This document shows positions 19,986 through 64,000 of a stretch of 64,000 nt of DNA, one piece after another. The first letter of the stretch is position 1; each line of letters opens with the position of its first letter. This stretch comes from Macrostomum lignano. Lineage: Eukaryota. The stretch is from contig NIVC01000010.1 in the NCBI GenBank assembly GCA_002269645.1, positions 1,736,001 to 1,800,000 of the forward strand, read 5' to 3'. The position numbers were made by a program, and so were the translations under genes. Under the pieces are notes generated by a model. The model did no database searches, was not told the DNA's origin, and saw only the letters and a program-made list of their open reading frames with translations.

Positions 19986-22900
19986 TTAAGTTTCTCCAGC
20001 TCCACTTGACTGCGTCAAAGCGAACATTGGAGCCTGCGCAATGAGCAGCTCAACGGCGTCCTCGCGCCCCAGTTCCCGCAGAACGTCAACCAGAGCTCCG
20101 ACATTGGTGCCGCCCGGCCCGCCGACTCGTCGCCACTCGTCCAGCAGGACAGCCGTTCGGCTGCGCAGCCACTCGTTGCCGCTGTGCACCGCGGGCACGG
20201 AGTGGATCAGGCCGAGCCGCACTGCCAGCAGGCACCAGTCCTTGCCGAGCGGATCCGGCGGATCAAACATGCGGCAGAGGCGCTGCAGAGTCGGGGCTCT
20301 AAGCGACGACAGTGGAAGCTGGGGGCCCAGGGTTAGATGCGACAGTAGCTCTCGGCTGCCAAAGCAGATCAGGTTTTCCAGGTCCTCTTCTTCTTCCTCC
20401 TCGTCTTGTGTCTCATCGCACGTTGAACCGCTGGCGGGAAACGCGATCGGGATAGTTGGCGGCGGAAAGCTGATCAAGCTGCCCGACTCACTGGACTCCC
20501 CTGTTGTGCTTTGGTGCTTCTGCATTGCTCGAAACACGGCACTCTGCGGCACGGCCAGTTTAAGTCTCCTTGGAAACTGACGCAGCTCTTTCGGGCTGAG
20601 CAAAGCCAGATCGAACTCTAGGCCGGGGCACATGTCGTCAATTGTCTGCTCCAACAGGCCGGCGATGTCTTGGCAGATACCAAACAGAAGCTGGGCCCGG
20701 GCCGGCGGACCCCTGGCTCGAAGTCGGATCAGCTGATCCGATTCTTCGAGTTGCAGCATGCACTCGACGCAGCCTTCCAGAGACAGTTTTGAGCCGTGGA
20801 ACCATTGGAAGAGATCGATGCGCAGCGGCTCCAAAGGCGGTGGTCTGCAGGCGGCTGCTTGAATACTCCGACGCAGACGGCACTGAACTCGAGGGAAAAT
20901 ATGCACTAGCTGGGAGGCGGCCATCGATGCCTTCAGTTGCCAGCCGCCATACACTGAGTTCTCGTGCTGAGCTGTCGGCTCCCATGGACTTCGGCCGCTC
21001 TCCAAGAAGTTCAAACAGGGAAACTCGTATTGAACATCTTCGTCACTGTCAGAATCTTCGGCGCCACCATCGAGGTCAGCTCGAGTGCAGAGATCCAGTG
21101 CAGACAGCAGTCGAACCAGCTGATCAGCAGCAGTTTCGCCCGTCATGAACTGAACGTCATTCACTGAGAATGTACCTGTGACGCGAGCCTGCGCAATGTT
21201 GTCATACGACAAAAGGTAGCCTAGTACATCGGAACAGAGCCACTGCGGACTGAGCACAATCATGTCCTGCTCTACTTCTGATTCTAGGTAGACGACATCG
21301 CCGGTGTATTGCAGTTCCTGGATGAGATCTTTCAGATGATCGTCTGAGCACAATGGGTTGACTTTGCCCCGTACGGCTTCAATAAACTGCTGCCAGGTGA
21401 AAACTGGGAATTCTGTGGCTCCAGCCCATTCTGGTAGTCGGCTCGCCACAGTGTCGAGAAGACCATTGCCTCGAGGCAGGTGCCGCAAAATTTCCGTTCG
21501 CCAATCAGCCAGTCTCTGTCGAAGCGACTTCATTTCAGCAGACATTGCCTCGCTGGTGTCAACCGCGAAGACCTCGTGGCAAACTTCGAGCCTGTACTGA
21601 GCCAATTCCTGCACCTCGAGAAGCAATCGGTCAGCGTCTGCACTCTCAAGGAGACCACGCGGTCCGTCGCCACGAAAGACAGTCGCCGCATCTGCGTGCG
21701 TTCCAATAAGCAGCACTCGGGCGAGGGTCTTTGGCTTGCCGCAGTATCCTAGAGGTTCCCTTGGTGGCAATCGGGCCAGCAAAAAGTGCAGCCAGAACAG
21801 GACCTTCTGACGCATCGTCTCGTAGCATTCCGCTAAGCTGAACAGAATGGCGTGTACGCACGAAGTGTCGCCAATAAAATGATCGTAAAACAGATAGTAG
21901 GGCTCGTAACCAGAGAATTCCCACACGCTGAAGTCCCCAGCGCCAGTGATGTTCAAGTTTTGAACAGCTATGCCGCGTGTGTAGGCCTCGTGTTGGGCGT
22001 CAAAGCTAATTTCTGATGGTGCAAAGGACCGCTGCAACAGCGAGAAGCACTGCCGTCGGTCCAACTCGTCGTCACAGTCGCCAACAATTACTTGACCAGT
22101 GGAGGCGCCGCTTCCCCCACCGCCGCCGCTGCCGCCGGCAAGAAACGTCCGACGCAAAAAGCCGGTGATTCGGTTCGAGCGCAAACTGTCAATTAGAGCA
22201 GTCTTTCCGCTGCCGCTGTGACCGAACACCTTCAGCTTGATTCTGGGCAGGCTGCGCTGAGTAGGCACCAGCTGCTCAACGCAGACCGCTCGTCGCTCAG
22301 GTCGCATCCGGCCCAGTAAACTGGCCGTCATTGTGTGACCCTGCGCGAGTGACATAACCTCGGGTAGAAGGCCCTCTTGACTCGCCAGCTGCGGATTAGC
22401 GCCGGCGAGAAGAAGACAGCGAACAACTTCAAGATGACCAGCTCTGGCCGTTTGATGCAGTGGCGTGAGTCCTTGGACGTTGACAGCGTCAACTCGACAA
22501 CCGTAGGCACACAGCGCTTGGACAACTGGCAGCTGCCCTAAACGACTCGCTGCATGCAATGGAGAGTCGCGTTCCGACGAGTCGAGCTGATCAAGCGGTG
22601 CTCCAGCGCTTATTAGTAGCATAGCCATAGCCTGGTGCTGTCGTTGAATAGCATGTCGCAGCGGACCCCAGCCCTCGCTGTCCGGAATATCCGGTCGAGC
22701 CCCGGCACGAAGGAGGACGCGCGCGACTTCGATGCCCAAGGATTCGCTGACGATCTCGGAGGCCGCTATCACTAGCGGCGTGCGCTGGTGCCGCCTGTCG
22801 CGCGAATTCGGATTGGCGCGTCGACTGCCGAGTAGAAGTAGGCGCAGAATAGTCAGGTGACCCCCGCGACAGGCCAGGTGTAGCGGAGTCTCACCAGCTC

Positions 22901-23324
22901 GATTCTGGCCCTCCGGGCACACCGATCTATCCAGGAAAAAAGCCGCCACCTCGTCGTTGCCGACGTGGCTAGCCAGGTGAAGACCATTTTCGCAATCGGT
23001 GTTCAACTGGTGCAGGTCGGCGCCTCGCTGCTCCAACACCATCAGAGCCTCGACGGAACCGCTATCCGCCGCAACGTGCACGACCGTTCGACCACTGCTG
23101 TCGCGACAGTTCAGGTCGACAGTAGGCGGTAGGGTCAGCAATGCGTCGCGAACTTGGCTGGGATCGCCGCTTGCGGCAGCTTCAAACAGGCCGGCCAGCG
23201 GGAAGGACGCATCACCGCCTGCCGCTTCGCCTTCGCCGGTATTCAAAGAAGCGTCGTTAGCATCGTTCGCCAAGGAGTTGACGCCGTCCGCAATGCTTGA
23301 GCCGTCAATTTCTAGTAGACTCAT
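19986..23324 (-). CDS. DAPK1: DAPK1-like Roco protein (ankyrin repeats - ROC - COR - death domain), no kinase domain, intronless, 1112 aa
   Basis: About 8-9 ANK repeats; P-loop IKLKVFGHSGSGKT; DAPK-type G3 FSVWEFSGYEPYYLFYDHF; COR LQYTGDVVYL...LSPQWLC; death domain DPPDPLGKDWCLLAVRLGL...LLDEW. An in-frame TAA lies two codons upstream of the ATG. Confidence 0.9.
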   Translation of the reverse strand: MSLLEIDGSSIADGVNSLANDANDASLNTGEGEAAGGDASFPLAGLFEAAASGDPSQVRDALLTLPPTVDLNCRDSSGRTVVHVAADSGSVEALMVLEQRGADLHQLNTDCENGLHLASHVGNDEVAAFFLDRSVCPEGQNRAGETPLHLACRGGHLTILRLLLLGSRRANPNSRDRRHQRTPLVIAASEIVSESLGIEVARVLLRAGARPDIPDSEGWGPLRHAIQRQHQAMAMLLISAGAPLDQLDSSERDSPLHAASRLGQLPVVQALCAYGCRVDAVNVQGLTPLHQTARAGHLEVVRCLLLAGANPQLASQEGLLPEVMSLAQGHTMTASLLGRMRPERRAVCVEQLVPTQRSLPRIKLKVFGHSGSGKTALIDSLRSNRITGFLRRTFLAGGSGGGGGSGASTGQVIVGDCDDELDRRQCFSLLQRSFAPSEISFDAQHEAYTRGIAVQNLNITGAGDFSVWEFSGYEPYYLFYDHFIGDTSCVHAILFSLAECYETMRQKVLFWLHFLLARLPPREPLGYCGKPKTLARVLLIGTHADAATVFRGDGPRGLLESADADRLLLEVQELAQYRLEVCHEVFAVDTSEAMSAEMKSLRQRLADWRTEILRHLPRGNGLLDTVASRLPEWAGATEFPVFTWQQFIEAVRGKVNPLCSDDHLKDLIQELQYTGDVVYLESEVEQDMIVLSPQWLCSDVLGYLLSYDNIAQARVTGTFSVNDVQFMTGETAADQLVRLLSALDLCTRADLDGGAEDSDSDEDVQYEFPCLNFLESGRSPWEPTAQHENSVYGGWQLKASMAASQLVHIFPRVQCRLRRSIQAAACRPPPLEPLRIDLFQWFHGSKLSLEGCVECMLQLEESDQLIRLRARGPPARAQLLFGICQDIAGLLEQTIDDMCPGLEFDLALLSPKELRQFPRRLKLAVPQSAVFRAMQKHQSTTGESSESGSLISFPPPTIPIAFPASGSTCDETQDEEEEEEDLENLICFGSRELLSHLTLGPQLPLSSLRAPTLQRLCRMFDPPDPLGKDWCLLAVRLGLIHSVPAVHSGNEWLRSRTAVLLDEWRRVGGPGGTNVGALVDVLRELGREDAVELLIAQAPMFALTQSSGAGET

Positions 23325-31311: not shown

Positions 31312-49235
<17,924 letters not shown>

Positions 49236-56470: not shown

Positions 56471-57604
56471 ACCTACCTTCGACATCATATCTAGATACTC
56501 GATATGCGAACAAAAAAACTGCTGTTTATCCTACTTTCAAGTACATACAGTAACTCAAAACAATATCTCGTACAGATGACTAGAAATTTATTCATCTGCA
56601 CTTTTAATAACAATAATTAGCAGCCAAAAATTTATTACTACTATTTATATTCCGCAGCGCCTATTTTTATGTAAGCTACGCGCAAAAATAATTAAAATAA
56701 ACACATGTAACTTCTCAGATATATTTGTAACCAATAGGTTACATTCAAGCACACAGGGTATTACGTGTAATGTATCAATTTGCGTGTGTATTATGTAAGT
56801 ACAAATTGAAGCGACAAAAACTGACTTCGAGAAGAAGCTGCACAATCATCATTAGCATCAGTCCAACAATTTAAATGCTGGCACCGCTAGGCCCATGGCA
56901 GACAGCTTGAAGCACTTAACAGGTTTCTGTGTCAATTTTGCTTCTCGAGTGGATGACTGACACCTGAAAAGTATTGTGAGCAACTTTCTTCGTTTGTCAT
57001 TTTTACAGGAAAAATGTACACTGCTATTAATTAAGCTGTGGCGATCAGGTATGCGAGTGCCGTGGTGATAGTACGAGTACATGCAGCCCCTCAGATTACT
57101 AAAGATAAAAGGCATCATGCGCCAAATAGCATCACAACTTAGTAAACTAAAATGTAAGATCCAGGCAAAACAGCGTGGGTGTGCTTGTTTTAAATGACGC
57201 TGCCCCAATCGCACAGGTAGTAGTTAAAAGTCCCACTTCTGACTACTTATTTAGTAATATCAGAAGAGGGTCTTTAGAGACACATTTGAGACCTGAATCA
57301 TGAATCATGTACGCCCGGCCTTACAACCGGAATCACAGGCGATGCTCTTAAGTGACCGGTCAAGATTACAGGCGATTGTAATTAAATAAGTTTTCACTCT
57401 GGTGTCATTTGGCGTCGGATTGTTAAAATTGCCTTTATAGTTATCATCATTGGGGCAATGCATTATAATAGGTACGAGTATTTATAAAAAAACTTCAAAA
57501 GAAAGAACCTAAACTAAATAAAAACTCGTATATTGAAAAACTGTATCTTAAGATTACTACCCTCGTATTTTATTACCAGTACCTGAGTATCTAAGAAGCT
57601 GAAT

Positions 57605-57750
57605 ATACGAGATGCTGGCCCAGCAACTAAAGATCTGGGAAGCTGACCTGGCTATTGAGTATTTGGGAAGCTGACCCAGCAATTGAGGATCTGGGACGGT
57701 GGCTCAGCAATTCAGAATCTGGAAAGCTGACCTAGCAATTGTGGATCATT
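57605..57750. repeat. Degenerate ~27-bp tandem repeat, about 5 copies
   Basis: Unit close to GATCTGGGAAGCTGACC(T/C)(G/A)GCAATTGA. Confidence 0.7.
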
Positions 57751-58352
57751 TAACATGAGCATTTAACTACATAATAATGAGTACTAAAAACGAATACTCA
57801 ACACTGCTTAGTAAACAATATAGTCAGTAGGCTCAGACAATATTGGACAGTTGATTTCATAACTGAATTAGCTGGCAATCATATTAGTCAATTGAGAAAT
57901 ATTTTCCCTAAACACTAAAACGATTGCCAAACAGCCTGTACGAGCGACGCCAGTTATCTGATACCTTGCCGTGGAAATGCAAAAAATAGAACTGCTTGCA
58001 ATCCACAGTTAAGTAAAGAAGGGCCCGCCGCTCAAGGAGCAAGTGCAATATTAGCTCCCACACTGTCCCTGGCCATTGCAGTGTCTGCGTATCGCTCGGT
58101 GAATCTGCTAAAGCGTTACGCATGTTCAAATAGCAAACCAGAGTCTCAAATTAGCGCGCCATTGTCATCATTGCCTGATTTATGAACTGTTCAAACTGTA
58201 CAAATATACAAGGCTTGTTCTGTTCAGTTTGACTAGGCCTAGGCTTTGTGTCACAATATTGGGATTCTATTTTTAGCCACAGCAAGTTTGGGACTTTTTA
58301 AGTCACAATGGAAAGCATTTCCAACAACTTACTCAATCGGATTAAAAACTAT

Positions 58353-59486
58353 TTAGATAAACTTGGATCTGATCAATTTAATTGGCAGTCGAAGTTTCAA
58401 TTGTCGCATCACCCGAACAAACTGATAAGGAAACGGCGCTTTGATAACTGACACTGATGCAGAATCGCTAGGCGATTTGCTCGGATCCACTGGCACAGCA
58501 ACGCGTTGGCAGTGCAAGAACAATGGCAAATCTCTAGCCCTAGCTGGCCGAATACCCAGTCTAGTTAGTGTGCTCTCCGGCAATCGTTGGGGCATCAGCC
58601 GATCTCGCATGCTCGAATACTTGTGATCACCGAGCACTGGCGTGTTCAAACCATAGCCCAGATGCACCCGGATCTGATGCTTGCAACCTGTCAATGGTTG
58701 GACTTCAACCAGAGCGCATCGTTCGAATTTGTCAACAACTCGATACCGGGTGACAGCTTCTTTAGCTCCCGACCTGCTCGAAGCTGTCGGCACCCGAGCT
58801 CTAGTCAGCACCGTCAAGTTGGCTTCATCGAGAGCCGACTGAGTCGGGCGTAAGGCCGCTCGCCAATCACAGTCTCTATGCTTAGCCGAAGCTGTCAACG
58901 GGATGTCAACGATGCCCTCCAACGGACTGGGCACATCGCGAGTTATACAATAATAGTACTTTTCTATACGGCGTTCTTTAAAACAGAGCTTTAAATGTCG
59001 AGCCTGCTGCTCGGTGCGAGCTAACAGTACAATGCCAGTTGAAGTTCGATCGATTCGATGCACCGGGTGCAGGTGAGGACAAGACAGTCGAGCCGCAAGG
59101 CCTGGCAGGTGATCGATTAAGTTAACTGATCCGCGAGCAACTGTGCCACCCTGACAGCACACATTGTAGGGCTTGTTAATTGCTACAATGCCGTATTTAT
59201 CCCAGACAATGTTCTTATAAAGAAATTCGACAATTTCATCAGGCTTTAGGCTGGCGAATGACCAGGTACGCTTGTTGGGTAGAACAGACCCGTCTTCTTT
59301 GTCTATGGGATTGTTAATAGGCATTTTATCGCCTTGTTTCACTTGAGCAGACGACTCAGATTTAGCCATTTTTTCACTGTTATTAATCATCTCAGTACGA
59401 ATTTTCAAAGCATAGTCAAATGCAGTGGCACTAGATGCATAGCATCGGGTGAAGGCTGGCAGTAGTGGCATCATTGATGAAAACAT
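58353..59486 (-). CDS. RPUSD4: RluA-family RNA pseudouridine synthase, RPUSD4-like (probably mitochondrial), intronless, 377 aa
   Basis: Catalytic HRIDRTSTG, KYYYCI, TGCKHQIRVHL and PVLGDHKYS motifs; N-terminus resembles a mitochondrial presequence. Confidence 0.85.
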   Translation of the reverse strand: MFSSMMPLLPAFTRCYASSATAFDYALKIRTEMINNSEKMAKSESSAQVKQGDKMPINNPIDKEDGSVLPNKRTWSFASLKPDEIVEFLYKNIVWDKYGIVAINKPYNVCCQGGTVARGSVNLIDHLPGLAARLSCPHLHPVHRIDRTSTGIVLLARTEQQARHLKLCFKERRIEKYYYCITRDVPSPLEGIVDIPLTASAKHRDCDWRAALRPTQSALDEANLTVLTRARVPTASSRSGAKEAVTRYRVVDKFERCALVEVQPLTGCKHQIRVHLGYGLNTPVLGDHKYSSMRDRLMPQRLPESTLTRLGIRPARARDLPLFLHCQRVAVPVDPSKSPSDSASVSVIKAPFPYQFVRVMRQLKLRLPIKLIRSKFI

Positions 59487-62400
59487 GTTTATGTAAAATC
59501 AGCAAATAGAACATTATAAAAGACAGCAAATCATATAAGTATGGATTGTTTGTTAAATAATAAAATAATTTCCTATCTTAAACTGAAAAAATAAGCTACA
59601 TTATTAAATTAACATCATACTTTCCCTGGGGCATTAGCAGCTATGAGTCAAGAGTGTTCTCAGCTAAGAATGCATGAATCTTGTGTTAGAATTTCAGGAG
59701 CCAATAGTTACAATCTAGGAATTTCTTCTAAAGTGAAGCTAAGAAAGACAGGTGCTAAAAGTAAAAGTGTTGCACAATGTGGACATTCTATAATGAGTGA
59801 GTCTAACAAACCAAGACTGCAAGATATACAAAAAAGCTCCTTTGGTGTATTTTTATAACAAGATAGAAAAAGTAAAAACGTCTATTTTGAAATTTAGCAG
59901 GAGCTTAGCTTTGACATGAAACTTGCACAAAAGTAGTCACAGGTACATGATGAAATAAAGAGCAACATGAAGAGCATCTATTATAAAGTGAAGGTCTAAT
60001 AATTATGCATTTATTTAAATTCAATGGCATACATAAGCACTATGAGCTAAAACACTAATAAGGTGATATATTGTTGCACATACAAATGCAACTTCCTAAA
60101 TTTAATCTAGCCAATGTGACAGTTTGCCATAAAATCATATACCTTTATCTAGAAGGTACTTTTGCAATAGCTTTGCACTGTATAAGCATATGCAATTCAA
60201 ATCTTTTCTCCCTGCCTTCAATAATCTTTTTTCCTTAAGGAATGTATCCCTTAAAAATTATTGATGCTTGGTACCTGCCTTGGCTTTGGCAAAGCAAGAC
60301 AAGCTAATGATAAATGAACAAACTAAAAACTAAATTTGGTTGCAACTTATTTGTAATTAAGAACTAGCGATTCTAAGGAGCCCTACTAAACAATTGGCTA
60401 TATAGCAACAATAGCAGCTAATAGTTTGGAAGCCTATTGAATAATATATATATAAGTCATATTGCCTAATAACTAAGCAAGTTCATTTAACTTCTATGCC
60501 TAATGGACAATGACCTCACATAAGCTCTCCTCAGAAGTTCCCTATAGCCATATCCTAAGAACAGAGCCACACAGCTTTAAAGCATAAACCCAATATAGCT
60601 ATGGTTGAATGCTAGCTTTGTAGTCTAGTGGGCTTTAACTTCAATAACCAATATAGCCACTACAACTACAACTACTGTCCATGCATGGATTTGGGGATTT
60701 AATCAACAAAGAGTTACAATGCCATATGCATGTTGCAGTTGGGTGGTAGGCCTAGTGGCTAAATTTAGGATAAATGTTTTCACTTTTAATACAAGATAAG
60801 ATCTTTAAGTCCCTAGGGTCAAAGATTCAAACAACATTTTTGATATTGTACAAACATTGTAGTTTAAATAGGGCTTAAGTTAAGATGAATAAAGCCAATG
60901 GGAAAGTCACCTAGCATTTGCCATTATCAAAGAAGTAATAAGGCAATATACCTAGAAATTTGCTATATTTTTGTATGCTAGGTGCTACAAATGCATATCA
61001 AAGGAATCAAAGAAATAACAAATGTCACTACTTTCTTACCTAGTCACTAGTTTATTTAGACTTCTCATCTGCTATTTAGCTCTCTTTGTTTACATTGTCT
61101 CAAACAATATAGTTCAAACCTCTCTTTCTCTCTCTCCTTTTCCTTTTTCTGATTGGTCAGTTTCTCATTCTTTTATAAGCCTCTTATTCTCTCACCTGTT
61201 GCATATTCAACCCTCCTTACTTTATGTCAGCCAACCTTTTTAGTTAAGCCTTTAAGTCCATTTGGCCTAGAGGCTCTTCCAAATCTGTCAAGCCATTTAT
61301 TGGCTTGCTTATTCGACTAAACATGCCTATAACAAGCTCCAAAAGTGGCCAACAAAGTTCTAGGCCTAGCAGCAAGTTTAATTGATATCTTCAAGAGTCC
61401 TAAGATATGGAATTCAGACTTATGGCCTCAAAAGTCATAGTTTTAAGAGTTGGATAGTTGAGTTGAAACATTGTTAAGCAAAATTTGGTAGTATGATATG
61501 CATATTTAAGTCTTTGTCTATTCTCACAAGACCTAGTTTAGCTAGTTTTAGCTTTTTATTGTTTGTTTTTTGTGACTGGTAAAGAGCAATAGGACAATGT
61601 ATCAGTTATAATAAATGCCAATATGGCCATAAGCCCCCTCACTGCCAAGGATATTATTAAGGCAATGGAATAGACTACCTATATACCAGATATAAAATAG
61701 CTTGTATAGTTAGCAATTAAGCACAATTGCTTAGTACCATATCTTAAAGTCAATATTGCATAAATATGTATAGTCTTATTGGAACCTTCCAAGAGACAAT
61801 CCTATCTAGTGAAGACTACAAAAACTAGTTTAAACTTGATATTCAAAGCTACATTGTTGAAGTTGCTAAAGCTCCTAAGCAAGCAAATGACTTGACACTA
61901 TAACTACAATTGACATTTCAGTCTAGCAAAGTGGTCAATGCTAAACTAAATGAGCAAGTTTTCTAAGCAGCATTCTACAACAATCTAGATATACAGCCAT
62001 GCTGGCCAAAGGACATGCTTGTTGCTAGATTTTATAGGTCCACTTTATTGAGATGGCATAGATATGTTTTTATGCAATATTTACATTTGGCTTTTTTTTA
62101 AAGAACATACTTACCAAATTTAAAATGTATATACTTCAATATTTATTTTCAAATTATGCCAAGAAAGTATATTTCAAGAAAATATACATTTGTTCATTAG
62201 TATTATTATTATTTTTATAGTTTCTAAAAGCCTGATTTACCAAAGTATCCTAATTTTATTATAGGAAGCTCAAATAAATATGATTTGCAAAATTGACTAT
62301 AGAGTAATTTTTGGCATTTAACATTTCTTGGCATCAACCTTGACTACAGGCTTACTCTAAAACCCCATTGTGAGGCTGTTATCACCAAATGCAGAGCACT

Positions 62401-64000
62401 TATTGTGCTATGGTGCTATGGTACAAACAGAGAGAGTGGGCCATCTCTGCACCTCTAATCTAGCCTACACTAGCAAAGAAAGCAAAAAGAACATTAAGCA
62501 ACAACAAAGGAAATGAACAACAAACAAAAAAACTTGCCAAGAAGAGTCAGAATGGCATCCAAGCTAAATCCACATAGTAAATTGTTGCATAGGTCCCACA
62601 CTGTGGATAACCTATAGATGCCAATTTCAGCCAGGAACCCACATTGGGCCTGCAGACCCTAACCTAGTAGACCTCAAAAGGCTCTTAATCTTGTACCAAG
62701 CAACAATTGCTTTTCTGTGCTTTTGTCAATAGTTTGATTTTTTTTATATACCCATGAAAAAATCATGCATCCCGTGTCTAAACCCAATTCAAATATTTCT
62801 TCTACTTTCACTATTTATACTAGCATCTAGAGAAGAAAGCCATTATAAATGATTATTAAAATGACAAAAATAAAAGTTTAAAAGAACGTCACCATTTGGG
62901 CTGGAACAGTGCATAGGCTCACTCTTATCTATTATCAGGCTCTCAATTAGCTGTACTCACAAATATCTATTAAACAAAATAAATAGCTTTTACTACCTTT
63001 ATACTACATTTTTACTTCCAATTTTTTTTATACAAAATAACTATTATTGCAAACCTTCAAATAATGCTCATTTTAATAATTATAAATATGTATATTGCGG
63101 CTAAGCCCCCCCCCCCAAGGGCTGACCTATAACCTTAAATTTTTAAGGTCAATGCATATTAACAACAACAAAGTCATTTGATTAGAGCTATTAGAGTTGC
63201 ATTGGATGATACCAATGGTTGGCATTGGCACTAATGCTATGAAATTGCTTTGAGACCATACTACAAAGCAAAGCTCTATTATATAGGCATTAGTAATTAT
63301 GACTAAAACAGAATTAAGGTCTACTATTTTTACTTTAGGAACCAAGCAACAAAAATATGATTCAAGCAAAGCCATTGATTCTAGGTTTTTTGTTTCATAG
63401 GCATGCAATGACATGTCAAAATTAAAAATGGCATAATGATTTTTTGCCATTATGTTATTGTCAAATTGCCAATGCTAAATCCCTGATTCCAAATTTCAGT
63501 TTTAACCATAAACTTTTAAATTTGTTCAAATATTACCTTGTTTGTTGTGATAGCTGCATTTTATCAATTTATTTGTTATGCCAATGGCATATTGAAATTG
63601 AAAATGACATAATGATTTTGATACTATTATGCAAAATGGCAATAAAAAACCTAGCATTGATCAATACTAAGCAAAAGTGTATCAATATATTTTGTAAAAA
63701 TTTCAATTTCAATTTCAAAGGTAAAAAAATATATATTTTGCATTGGTAAAATTTCTTGTCTAGCTAGATATGAATCTAGAATCATATTTATAGAATTGGC
63801 TATCTAGCAATATCATTCATTAAACTCACTATAGGGCATAGGCCTATGTACATTTTTAGCTATTGACAAGAAAATTTCCAAAAATAAATATTTTCATATT
63901 ATGCCAACATTTTAGAAAGGTTTTTTTCATTAAAATTCCATTCCTTATTAATCATTAATTGAGATGGCATAATTTATGTTGGGGCAAAAGGTTGTCCACT
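59450..64000. other. CpG-depleted compositional domain running to the window end
   Basis: Manual count of 6 CpG in about 4550 bp (near 59879, 60368, 61314, 62773, 62887, 63098), while GpC occurs on almost every 60-nt line. Confidence 0.9.

What the first reader, a model, noticed from the sequence alone, without database searches (positions are those of the whole stretch)
59450..64000. Sharply bounded domain in which CpG has been almost completely erased
Seen: 6 CpG in about 4550 bp, roughly 20-fold below what the local G and C content predicts (rough estimate). GpC, CpA and TpG are common, and TpA/CTAG words look enriched. Equally AT-rich non-coding DNA at 56480-58350 has several CpG per 100 nt, and all transposons in the window keep their CpGs. 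The switch coincides with the 5' end of the RPUSD4-like ORF. Established: germline 5mC deamination converts CG to TG/CA, and to TA after both strands. Inference: a targeted, dense, long-term methylation or deaminase domain in an otherwise CpG-normal genome, i.e. a locus-specific silencing or hypermutation system, or foreign DNA with this signature.
Basis: partly seen in the sequence, partly recalled or inferred. Interest (0 to 1): 0.8.

Follow-up and report, generated by a model that had tools for sequence, protein, structure and literature searches.

The report
CpG-erased intergenic block in a flatworm
A 6-kb non-coding stretch next to a flatworm housekeeping gene has lost almost all its CpG sites and is still losing them about 15 times faster than its neighbours, which is the footprint expected of DNA methylated in the germ line of an animal whose methylation map is poorly known.

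Summary
Window 59447-64000 holds 6 CpG against 118 expected (o/e 0.05). The window is Macrostomum lignano contig NIVC01000010.1. Read further along that contig, the block ends just as sharply at 65486 (11 CpG in 6.0 kb).

It is not a misjoin or a contaminant. Two other homeologous contigs carry the same block at the same junction with the RPUSD4-like gene. It is non-coding, non-repetitive, and has no Pfam or Rfam match.

In a polarised three-copy comparison, C>T at CpG occurred at 3 of 14 sites inside the block, against 20 of 1390 non-CpG C/G sites (about 15-fold, p about 0.001). In the flanking genes and spacer the figures are 2 of 305 against 9 of 1320 (no excess). No other sequence context is elevated.

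The best explanation is long-standing germline CpG methylation of an intergenic domain followed by 5mC deamination. M. lignano retains DNMT1 and DNMT3, according to the literature. The estimated gain and loss rates predict roughly the CpG count observed.

It is not a one-locus system: an unrelated contig has a similar but weaker CpG-poor AT-rich domain.

The second CpG-free stretch in the window (45528-46971) is only a 96-bp satellite.

The kind of feature is known. What is unusual is the target (no gene, no recognisable transposon) and the extreme depletion. Methylation itself was not measured.

The parts
59447..64000 (.). CpG-depleted, AT-rich, non-coding block (the part inside the window). 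On the parent contig it continues to 65486. After a 5-CpG cluster (65487-65566) and a 555-bp insertion found only in this copy (65567-66121), a further 512 bp (66122-66633) is mostly CpG-poor. A (GA)n array at 67913-69136 lies beyond.
   Evidence: 6 CpG against 117.9 expected. Extension and second edge. No ORF longer than 107 aa. No Pfam hit in six frames. No Rfam hit. No internal repeats. Present in all three homeologous contigs.
58353..59486 (-). Single-exon RPUSD4-like pseudouridine synthase gene. Its 5' end marks the left edge of the block. It is CpG-normal (o/e 0.96).
   Evidence: PF00849, E=3e-28. Homologs are named RPUSD4. 60 of 65 aligned CpGs are conserved in all three copies, and 0 of 21 are polymorphic in 59000-59499.
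59583..59595 (-). Candidate 3' (trans-)splice acceptor cttattttttcAG, 97 nt upstream of the RPUSD4 ATG and inside the block. If it is used, the gene's outron runs into the CpG-free DNA.
   Evidence: Sequence. A 65%-identical ortholog transcript (L005) starts with the last 16 nt of the M. lignano spliced leader, 7 nt before its ATG. The leader sequence is given in PMC5173321. Use of this acceptor is inferred, not shown.
59879..59880 (.). Residual CpG. States in L001/L002/L003: CG/TG/CG.
60368..60369 (.). Residual CpG. States: CG/CG/TG.
61314..61315 (.). Residual CpG. States: CG/CG/CA.
62773..62774 (.). Residual CpG conserved in all three copies. It is one of only three such sites between 59447 and 65486.
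62887..62888. Residual CpG. States: CG/CA/CA. By the local sister relation I read it as a new CpG gained in this copy; the automated pass did not resolve the local topology at this site and does not count it.
   Evidence: topology read from the identity table
63098..63099 (.). Residual CpG. States: CG/TG/CG.
62553..62554 (.). Former CpG. This copy has CA, while its sister copy and the outgroup have CG, so this is a polarised CpG loss in this copy.
63632..63633 (.). Former CpG. This copy has TG, while its sister copy and the outgroup have CG, so this is a polarised CpG loss in this copy.
56480..58350 (.). CpG-normal intergenic spacer on the other side of RPUSD4, used as the non-coding control.
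   Evidence: CpG o/e 0.745. C>T per CpG site 0.049 against 0.037 at non-CpG sites.

Best explanation
The block is an intergenic, non-coding, AT-rich stretch of the Macrostomum lignano genome that has been densely CpG-methylated in the germ line for a long time and probably still is. 5-methylcytosine deaminates to thymine, so CpG turns into TpG or CpA about 15 times faster than other C>T changes. New CpGs arise only at the ordinary rate from the large TpG/CpA pool, so the sequence sits near a mutational equilibrium of a few CpG per 6 kb. The neighbouring genes (RPUSD4-like, Tudor), the spacer between them and the retroelement are unmethylated in the germ line and keep CpG o/e near 1. The sharp compositional edges are therefore the edges of a methylated chromatin domain: one lies at the 5' end of RPUSD4, the other near a small conserved CpG cluster, with a (GA)n array further out.

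Shown: the depletion; both edges; presence of the block on three homeologous contigs; a CpG-specific excess of losses confined to the domain; gains at the normal rate.

From the literature: M. lignano keeps DNMT1 and DNMT3 and has low-level 5mC.

Inferred: that methylation is the cause, that it acts in the germ line, and what targets it to this DNA.
For: (1) Depletion and two sharp edges.

(2) The organism is M. lignano assembly Mlig_3_7. It retains DNMT1 and DNMT3 and shows low 5mC (PMC11292947, PMC9246332, PMC10658182).

(3) Homeologous loci L002 and L003 have the same block at the same place, 1-4% diverged, so the depletion predates their divergence.

(4) Polarised substitutions on sister terminal branches. 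In the block, C>T at CpG is 3/14 sites against 20/1390 non-CpG C/G sites (Fisher p=0.0012). In the flanks it is 2/305 against 9/1320. Block against flank CpG gives p=0.0006. The result holds across window settings.

(5) T>C at TpG sites (2/577) equals T>C elsewhere (8/2309), so only the loss rate differs. Gains of about 0.0035 x 780 sites, against losses of about 0.43 per CpG dinucleotide, predict about 6 CpG per 6 kb. The observed count is 11.

(6) In the adjoining 66122-66633 stretch, 7-8 of the differences between L001 and L002/L003 are CG<->TG/CA, where about 0.85 are expected whatever the polarity.

(7) Two sites show three states, CG/TG/CA (64192 and 66477), which requires a loss on a short branch.

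(8) By context, only CpG is elevated. There is no TpC, CpC or CpA bias relative to the flanks.

(9) Two copy-specific insertions inside or beside the domain (986 bp in L003, 555 bp in L001) still have CpG o/e of 1 or more. That fits slow decay rather than instant editing.
Against: No methylation measurement was available here.

The polarised test rests on only 2-3 loss events inside the block.

The simpler unpolarised count (15 of 22 CpGs polymorphic) is what a null model predicts. There are about 780 TpG/CpA sites, and ordinary transitions there would create about 8-10 new CpGs, so that count cannot be used as evidence.

Converting host non-coding DNA in silico does not reproduce the block. 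It predicts CpA/TpG o/e 1.40 and GpC 1.26; the block has 1.21 and 1.76, and it is CTAG-rich. The block therefore has an old or distinct compositional history.

Canonical invertebrate methylation targets gene bodies, but no gene or transposon is recognisable here. The RPUSD4 exon that abuts the block, and that may lie in the same primary transcript, is untouched.

A 5-CpG cluster at the far edge (65487-65512) is conserved in 4 of 5 sites.
Confidence: 0.68

Rival explanations
1. Fossil depletion. The block lost its CpGs in the past, either under a methylation regime that has since stopped or before it arrived at this locus. It now evolves neutrally and is slowly regaining CpGs.
For: The count of polymorphic CpGs in the block (15) is close to what ordinary T>C changes at about 780 TpG/CpA sites would give. 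The composition is not that of freshly deaminated host DNA. Only 2-3 polarised losses support ongoing decay.
Against: Polarised losses are about 15-fold above the non-CpG C>T rate (p about 0.001) and are absent in the flanks. The adjoining 512 bp shows a roughly 9-fold excess of CG<->TG/CA differences regardless of polarity. There are two three-state sites. The inferred ancestor had only about 10 CpG in 6 kb, which a relaxed sequence would exceed within a few times the homeolog divergence.
Confidence: 0.15
2. Foreign or mis-assembled DNA. On this reading the block is a contaminant, an assembly chimera, or a recent horizontal acquisition carrying the CpG-poor signature of its donor.
For: There is an abrupt change in GC content (48% to 32%) and in CpG at both edges. 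The k-mer profile is distinct: GpC 1.76, CTAG-rich, and enriched in AGGCCT and ATGCCA.
Against: Three independent contigs (2.39 Mb, 795 kb, 269 kb) carry the block with identical junctions and collinear flanks. A 787-bp host MITE inserted into it independently in two copies and also at an unrelated locus. The high GpC is an exaggeration of the host's own bias (1.24-1.45 in host AT-rich DNA). An unrelated host locus has the same kind of DNA. An ancient acquisition that was then methylated cannot be excluded, but it would merge with the main explanation.
Confidence: 0.04
3. A non-methylation cause. Candidates are selection against CpG or a structural or compositional constraint in an AT-rich spacer (for example nucleosome-excluding or late-replicating DNA), or a deaminase that does not depend on 5mC.
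For: No methylation data are available. The block's non-CpG C>T rate is about twice that of the flanks (0.0144 against 0.0068), although the flanks are partly coding.
Against: The excess is specific to the CpG context and to transitions. TpC, CpC and CpA contexts are not elevated. Other equally non-coding AT-rich host DNA keeps CpG o/e at 0.7-1.0. No known process other than 5mC deamination gives a roughly 15-fold CpG-specific transition excess (established knowledge).
Confidence: 0.08
4. Amplified CpG-free unit. On this reading the block lacks CpG simply because it is built from copies of a short CpG-free repeat, like the satellite at 45528-46971.
For: This is exactly the explanation for the other CpG-free stretch in the window: a 96-bp unit in 15 copies at 93-96% identity.
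Against: Self-BLAST of 59300-65700 finds only one 38-bp internal match. TRF finds no array inside the depleted block; its only hit between the far edge and RPUSD4 is a short 20-nt array in the copy-specific CpG-rich insertion at 65567-66121. The repeat finder gives only short chance-level pairs.
Confidence: 0.01

Closest known systems
Mosaic germline methylation of invertebrate genomes (Ciona, oyster, annelids), read through CpG o/e
   Same: Sharply bounded CpG-deficient domains lie next to CpG-normal DNA. The cause is attributed to 5mC deamination in the germ line. The organism has DNMT1 and DNMT3 (PMC3827831, PMC4378273, PMC11292947).
   Different: In those animals the methylated domains are mainly the bodies of constitutively expressed genes, with CpG o/e typically 0.3-0.6 (own knowledge). 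Here the domain has no gene, the adjacent housekeeping gene is CpG-normal, and o/e is 0.05-0.07.
Vertebrate bulk DNA versus CpG islands
   Same: AT-rich non-coding DNA has CpG o/e well below 0.2. CpG transitions run roughly 10-15 times faster than other transitions. Protected CpG-rich segments sit at gene 5' ends (own knowledge).
   Different: The proportions are inverted. In the roughly 91 kb of M. lignano DNA examined, most sequence is CpG-normal and the depleted DNA is the minority. GpC is strongly over-represented, unlike in vertebrates.
Repeat-induced point mutation in ascomycetes and CpG-directed hypermutation of repeats in some basidiomycetes
   Same: C>T hypermutation leaves AT-rich, sharply bounded tracts.
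   Different: Those processes are triggered by duplication and act fast. RIP prefers CpA. Here the sequence is unique within each subgenome, only CpG is affected, TpA is not raised, and young insertions inside the domain are still CpG-rich.
CpG-free satellite DNA (example in the same window, 45528-46971)
   Same: More than a kilobase without a single CpG.
   Different: The satellite is a 96-bp unit amplified 15 times. The block is complex, non-repetitive sequence.

Membership tests
Germline CpG-methylated domain (5mC-decay footprint) | CpG deficit relative to base composition, with GpC not deficient | tested here: met
   CpG o/e 0.05-0.07; GpC o/e 1.76
Germline CpG-methylated domain (5mC-decay footprint) | CpG>TpG/CpA substitutions in excess of other C>T changes, confined to the domain | tested here: met
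   Polarised counts: 3/14 against 20/1390 in the block; 2/305 against 9/1320 in the flanks. The adjoining 512 bp has 7-8 such differences where about 0.85 are expected. The number of events is small.
Germline CpG-methylated domain (5mC-decay footprint) | The organism encodes maintenance and de novo CpG methyltransferases (DNMT1, DNMT3) | not tested
   Taken from the literature (PMC11292947, PMC9246332).
Germline CpG-methylated domain (5mC-decay footprint) | Residual CpGs actually carry 5mC in germ cells | not testable with these tools
   Needs bisulfite, EM-seq or nanopore data. Wasik et al. 2015, cited for low-level 5mC, is not in the held library.
Invertebrate gene-body methylation | The depleted domain coincides with a transcription unit (exons and introns of an expressed gene) | tested here: not met
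   No called gene. No ORF longer than 107 aa. No Pfam hit in six frames. No Rfam hit. The RPUSD4 exon that abuts the block is CpG-normal and not hypermutable. An unannotated non-coding transcript or an outron cannot be excluded.
Transposon-targeted methylation | The domain is a recognisable transposable element or repeat copy | tested here: inconclusive
   No terminal repeats at the edges, no transposon protein remnants, and no similarity to the rest of the window or to L004 apart from the inserted MITE. The whole genome could not be searched. The clear retroelement at 50-52 kb is CpG-normal.
RIP-like repeat-induced hypermutation | Duplicated sequence as trigger, and a CpA>TpA bias with raised TpA | tested here: not met
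   The block is unique in the 69 kb examined. C>T at CpA is 0.043, against 0.057 and 0.020 in the two flanking non-coding stretches. TpA o/e is 0.91.
Contaminant or assembly chimera | The junction is unsupported by independent sequence | tested here: not met
   The same junctions occur on three contigs.

The most novel reading that the evidence does not exclude
In Macrostomum lignano the DNMT1/DNMT3 system is aimed neither at gene bodies nor at recognisable transposons. Instead it targets a minority compartment of gene-free, AT-rich, GpC-rich intergenic 'CpG deserts'. These have sharp edges at gene 5' ends or low-complexity arrays, and they also serve as landing pads for at least one MITE family. 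That would be a methylation landscape unlike the canonical invertebrate pattern, in a phylum where most lineages have lost DNA methylation.
Probability: 0.3. Interest if true: 0.65.

Novelty: new member of a known kind. Interest (0 to 1): 0.45.

Why it matters
Flatworms are a phylum in which DNA methylation has mostly been lost. M. lignano is the regenerating, transgenesis-ready model that still has DNMT1 and DNMT3. [quoted passage not shown]

This locus gives a sequence-only pointer to where germline methylation has acted: a gene-free spacer, not the neighbouring housekeeping gene or the retroelement. It offers six named CpGs and two sharp edges at which a bisulfite or nanopore experiment could confirm or refute that within a single amplicon-scale region.

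If the pattern is general, CpG o/e segmentation of the assembly would map the methylated compartment. It would also set up tests of what recruits DNMTs in an animal that lacks both gene-body and transposon targeting.

The three-homeolog comparison also shows how the neopolyploid subgenomes can be used as an internal mutation-rate assay.

Tried and rejected
(1) An exact-ORF look-up of the 377-aa RPUSD4 product found nothing. The annotated product has one extra residue and was reached through the homolog search.

(2) I first read '15 of 22 block CpGs polymorphic against 38 of 311 in the flanks' (Fisher p=1e-8), and pairwise CpG/non-CpG transition ratios of 19-30, as proof of hypermutability. I rejected this. 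With about 780 TpG/CpA sites and so few CpGs, ordinary T>C gains alone predict about 8-10 polymorphic CpGs. I replaced it with a polarised test.

(3) In-silico deamination of host non-coding DNA did not reproduce the block's dinucleotide profile, so 'recently converted ordinary spacer' is rejected.

(4) I tried to sample more of the genome through protein searches with the integrase ORF and the Ank/Death ORF. These returned one usable independent M. lignano locus (L004) and none, respectively. The Ank/Death ORF turned out to be single-copy DAPK1-like.

(5) Six-frame Pfam, Rfam at E<=0.1, tandem repeats and terminal or inverted repeats found nothing in the block.

(6) The second CpG-free stretch (45528-46971) was considered as a second domain and rejected; it is a satellite.

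(7) Wasik et al. 2015, the reported source of M. lignano bisulfite data, is not in the held library.

Full report
OBSERVATION

In 1-kb windows, CpG o/e is 0.6-1.2 across most of the 64-kb window. It drops to 0.03-0.07 from 60001 to the end, while GpC o/e rises to 1.5-2.2.

The exact CpG list shows dense CpGs up to 59446 and then only six: 59879, 60368, 61314, 62773, 62887 and 63098. For 59447-64000 that is 6 observed against 117.9 expected (o/e 0.051). In 2000 mononucleotide shuffles the lowest count was 88.

- GpC and CpA/TpG are common (o/e 1.76 and 1.21).
- TpA is not enriched (0.91).
- CTAG is 2.7 times denser than in host non-coding DNA, but this mostly follows from its trinucleotides.
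- The comparator spacer 56480-58350 keeps CpG (o/e 0.745) but is less AT-rich than the block (38.6% against 32.2% GC).

WHERE IT IS FROM, AND THE OTHER EDGE

The ORF at 58353-59486 (minus strand) is an RluA-type pseudouridine synthase (PF00849). Its homologs are named RPUSD4.

Its annotated product is encoded on NCBI GCA_002269645.1, contig NIVC01000010.1, 2.39 Mb. That assembly is Macrostomum lignano Mlig_3_7. The window is positions 1,736,001-1,800,000 of that contig.

The fetched locus L001 overlaps the window without a mismatch and extends it to 69489. CpG stays near zero to 65486, giving 11 CpG in 6040 bp (o/e 0.070). Then five CpGs occur within 26 bp, at 65487-65512. The feature is therefore a discrete block of about 6 kb with two sharp edges.

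Beyond the far edge lie, in order:
- a 555-bp CpG-rich insertion found only in this copy (65567-66121);
- 512 bp that are again mostly CpG-poor (66122-66633);
- another copy-specific kilobase;
- a 1.2-kb (GA)n array.

WHAT THE BLOCK CONTAINS

Nothing recognisable was found:
- no called gene;
- no ORF above 107 aa;
- no Pfam domain in any of six frames;
- no Rfam family at E<=0.1;
- no internal or terminal repeats;
- no tandem array inside the depleted block; TRF's only hit between the far edge and RPUSD4 is a short 20-nt array in the copy-specific insertion at 65567-66121.

The other long CpG gap in the window, 45527-46967, is a 96-bp satellite in 15 copies and has nothing to do with this block.

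IT IS NOT AN ARTEFACT OR FOREIGN DNA

The 90% cluster of the RPUSD4 protein has two further M. lignano members, on contigs NIVC01000199.1 and NIVC01001549.1. Their loci, L002 and L003, are collinear with L001 from the (GA)n array through the block, RPUSD4 and the Tudor gene. Identity is 94-99%. Both carry the same CpG-poor block. The junctions are therefore real, and the depletion predates the divergence of these homeologs.

Copy-specific insertions are informative:
- L003 has a 986-bp GC-rich insertion in the middle of the block, with CpG o/e about 1.
- L002 and L003 each have a 787-bp AT-rich element at different positions.

The 787-bp element has perfect terminal inverted repeats (GGCTCATTCCATATAAG), 4-bp target duplications and four internal TATGGTCGTAAC motifs, so it is a MITE. 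A third copy lies on an unrelated contig.

IS CpG STILL BEING LOST?

My first version was misleading. Fifteen of 22 aligned CpGs in the block differ among copies, always as TG or CA, against 38 of 311 in the flanks. But the block has about 780 TpG/CpA sites and hardly any CpG. Ordinary T>C changes alone would therefore create about 8-10 such polymorphisms (reasoning from the rates). I set that statistic aside.

The polarised version works as follows. It finds the local sister pair from the surrounding 800 columns. It then counts only changes on the two sister branches, with the third copy as outgroup.

Results:

| Region | C>T at ancestral CpG sites | C>T at non-CpG C/G sites | Fold |
|---|---|---|---|
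| Block | 3 of 14 | 20 of 1390 | about 15 (p=0.0012) |
| Flanks (RPUSD4, spacer, Tudor gene, downstream) | 2 of 305 | 9 of 1320 | about 1 |

Block CpG against flank CpG gives p=0.0006. The result is stable across five parameter settings, with p between 0.0007 and 0.014. It rests on only two or three events.

T>C at TpG sites (2/577) equals T>C at other T sites (8/2309). CpG gain is therefore normal and only loss is accelerated.

These rates give a rough equilibrium. Gains are about 0.0035 x 780 = 2.7. Losses are about 0.43 per CpG dinucleotide. That predicts about 6 CpG per 6 kb, and 11 are seen.

Independent support comes from the 512 bp at 66122-66633. There, L002 and L003 are nearly identical and L001 differs. 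Seven to eight of the differences are CG<->TG/CA, where about 0.85 are expected from pool sizes and the local transition rate, whichever way they are polarised.

Two sites show all three states, CG, TG and CA (64192 and 66477). That requires a loss on a short branch.

By sequence context only CpG stands out. There is no TpC, CpC or CpA bias compared with the flanks.

The fraction of variable CpGs switches at the same place as the composition. It is 0 of 21 in 59000-59499, against nearly all sites inside the block.

MECHANISM

The simplest account is germline CpG methylation of this domain followed by 5mC deamination. According to the literature, M. lignano retains DNMT1 and DNMT3 and shows low-level 5mC, whereas planarians and parasitic flatworms have lost them (PMC11292947, PMC10658182, PMC9246332).

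Three points do not fit a simple picture.
- The block is not ordinary spacer that was recently converted. In-silico deamination of host non-coding DNA predicts CpA/TpG 1.40 and GpC 1.26, whereas the block has 1.21 and 1.76. It is also enriched in CTAG, AGGCCT and ATGCCA. It is therefore old, or of a distinct sequence type.
- Invertebrate methylation normally marks gene bodies. Here there is no gene, and the abutting RPUSD4 exon is untouched.
- The far-edge cluster of five CpGs is conserved at four sites, as if protected.

The left edge has one further feature. A 65%-identical ortholog transcript from another sequencing run (L005) begins with the last 16 nt of the M. lignano spliced leader, 7 nt before its ATG (leader sequence in PMC5173321). 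In the window a strong acceptor, cttattttttcAG, lies 97 nt upstream of the ATG. RPUSD4 is therefore probably trans-spliced, and its outron may run into the block. What starts that transcript is unknown.

HOW SPECIAL IS THE LOCUS?

One unrelated M. lignano locus could be fetched (L004, NIVC01000237.1). Downstream of a retroelement it has at least 8.3 kb of gene-free DNA with 26-40% GC, CpG o/e of 0.0-0.9 per 500 bp (0.24-0.68 per kb) and GpC o/e mostly 1.2-2.0. It also contains the third MITE copy.

Across 91 kb of non-redundant sequence, the block is the extreme tail of the CpG o/e distribution. So it is not a one-off locus-specific system. It is the most depleted example seen of what looks like a genomic compartment. 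The sample is far too small to say how large that compartment is.

VERDICT

That inference is a long-term, CpG-directed, domain-restricted process in an otherwise CpG-normal genome.

Foreign DNA and misjoin are contradicted. A dedicated locus-specific system is not supported, given the similar domain on an unrelated contig. The CG-to-TA route is contradicted.

This is a new instance of a well-known phenomenon, the footprint of mosaic germline methylation. It has an unusual target and unusually complete erasure, in an animal where the methylation map matters and is reported as unknown.

Noticed in passing
window 45528-46971: A 96-bp tandem satellite in about 15 copies at 93-96% identity. GC is 45% with zero CpG and TpA o/e 1.35. 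A weakly related (about 70%) stretch lies at 42792-43147.
   Followed up: partly
L002 8408-9195; L003 3222-4007; L004 14536-15321 (minus): A 787-bp MITE with perfect terminal inverted repeats (GGCTCATTCCATATAAG), 4-bp target-site duplications (ATTA, CAAT, TGAA) and four internal TATGGTCGTAAC motifs whose CpG is conserved in every copy. All three copies seen lie inside CpG-poor AT-rich domains. Two inserted independently into the same block in different homeologs.
   Followed up: partly
L003 4893-5878: A 986-bp GC-rich (55-61%) insertion, CpG o/e about 1, in the middle of the CpG-free block of one homeolog only. It has 26-bp internal inverted repeats. Its identity is unknown. It would be a natural test of whether methylation spreads into young inserts.
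   Followed up: no
L001 3369-3923 (window-equivalent 65567-66121) and L001 2975-3085 (66406-66515): Clusters of a GGCGCAC / TGCGCC motif, including 20-nt tandem units (ATGCGCCGAGCCATGCACCG). They occur in a copy-specific 555-bp insertion and in the adjoining conserved flank. The flank cluster's CpGs are the ones that differ most between homeologs.
   Followed up: partly
L001 354-1577 (window-equivalent 67913-69136), and equivalents in L002 and L003: A 1.2-kb (GA)n-rich low-complexity array, conserved in position in all three homeologs, lies just beyond the CpG-poor domain. It is followed by a 14-nt GCGGGCAAATCTCC repeat. It may be a domain boundary element; this is speculation.
   Followed up: no
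L001/L002/L003 alignment, whole 17 kb: Which two of the three homeologous copies are closest changes along the locus: (2,3), then (1,3), then (1,2), then (1,3). This indicates recombination or gene conversion among the subgenomes or haplotypes of this neopolyploid.
   Followed up: partly
window 59487-65486 and L004 13000-21341: The hexamers AGGCCT, ATGCCA/TGGCAT and ATGCAT are 5-9 times more frequent in the block than in the rest of the window. AGGCCT is similarly frequent in the unrelated CpG-poor domain. GpC o/e is 1.5-2.4 in the block and mostly 1.2-2.0 in the L004 domain. This is unexplained.
   Followed up: partly
window 19986-23324 (minus): A 1112-aa single-exon ORF with ankyrin repeats, a COR domain and a Death domain. 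It is the C-terminal part of a DAPK1-like kinase; UniRef models run to 1741-1893 aa. CpG o/e is about 1 at 53-61% GC.
   Followed up: partly
window 33000-41000 and 44000-45100: Several tandem or low-complexity stretches have CpG o/e 0.4-0.6 and CpG gaps of 500-850 bp (35507-36352, 39673-40355, 44385-45096), with skewed TG/TT content. They were not examined and are probably repeat-unit effects like the satellite.
   Followed up: no
L005 1-23: A transcript contig from run SRR30276804 encodes a 65%-identical RPUSD4 ortholog. It starts with the 3' end of the Macrostomum spliced leader (CTCAATTTATTGCATG), so this gene is trans-spliced in a related species.
   Followed up: partly
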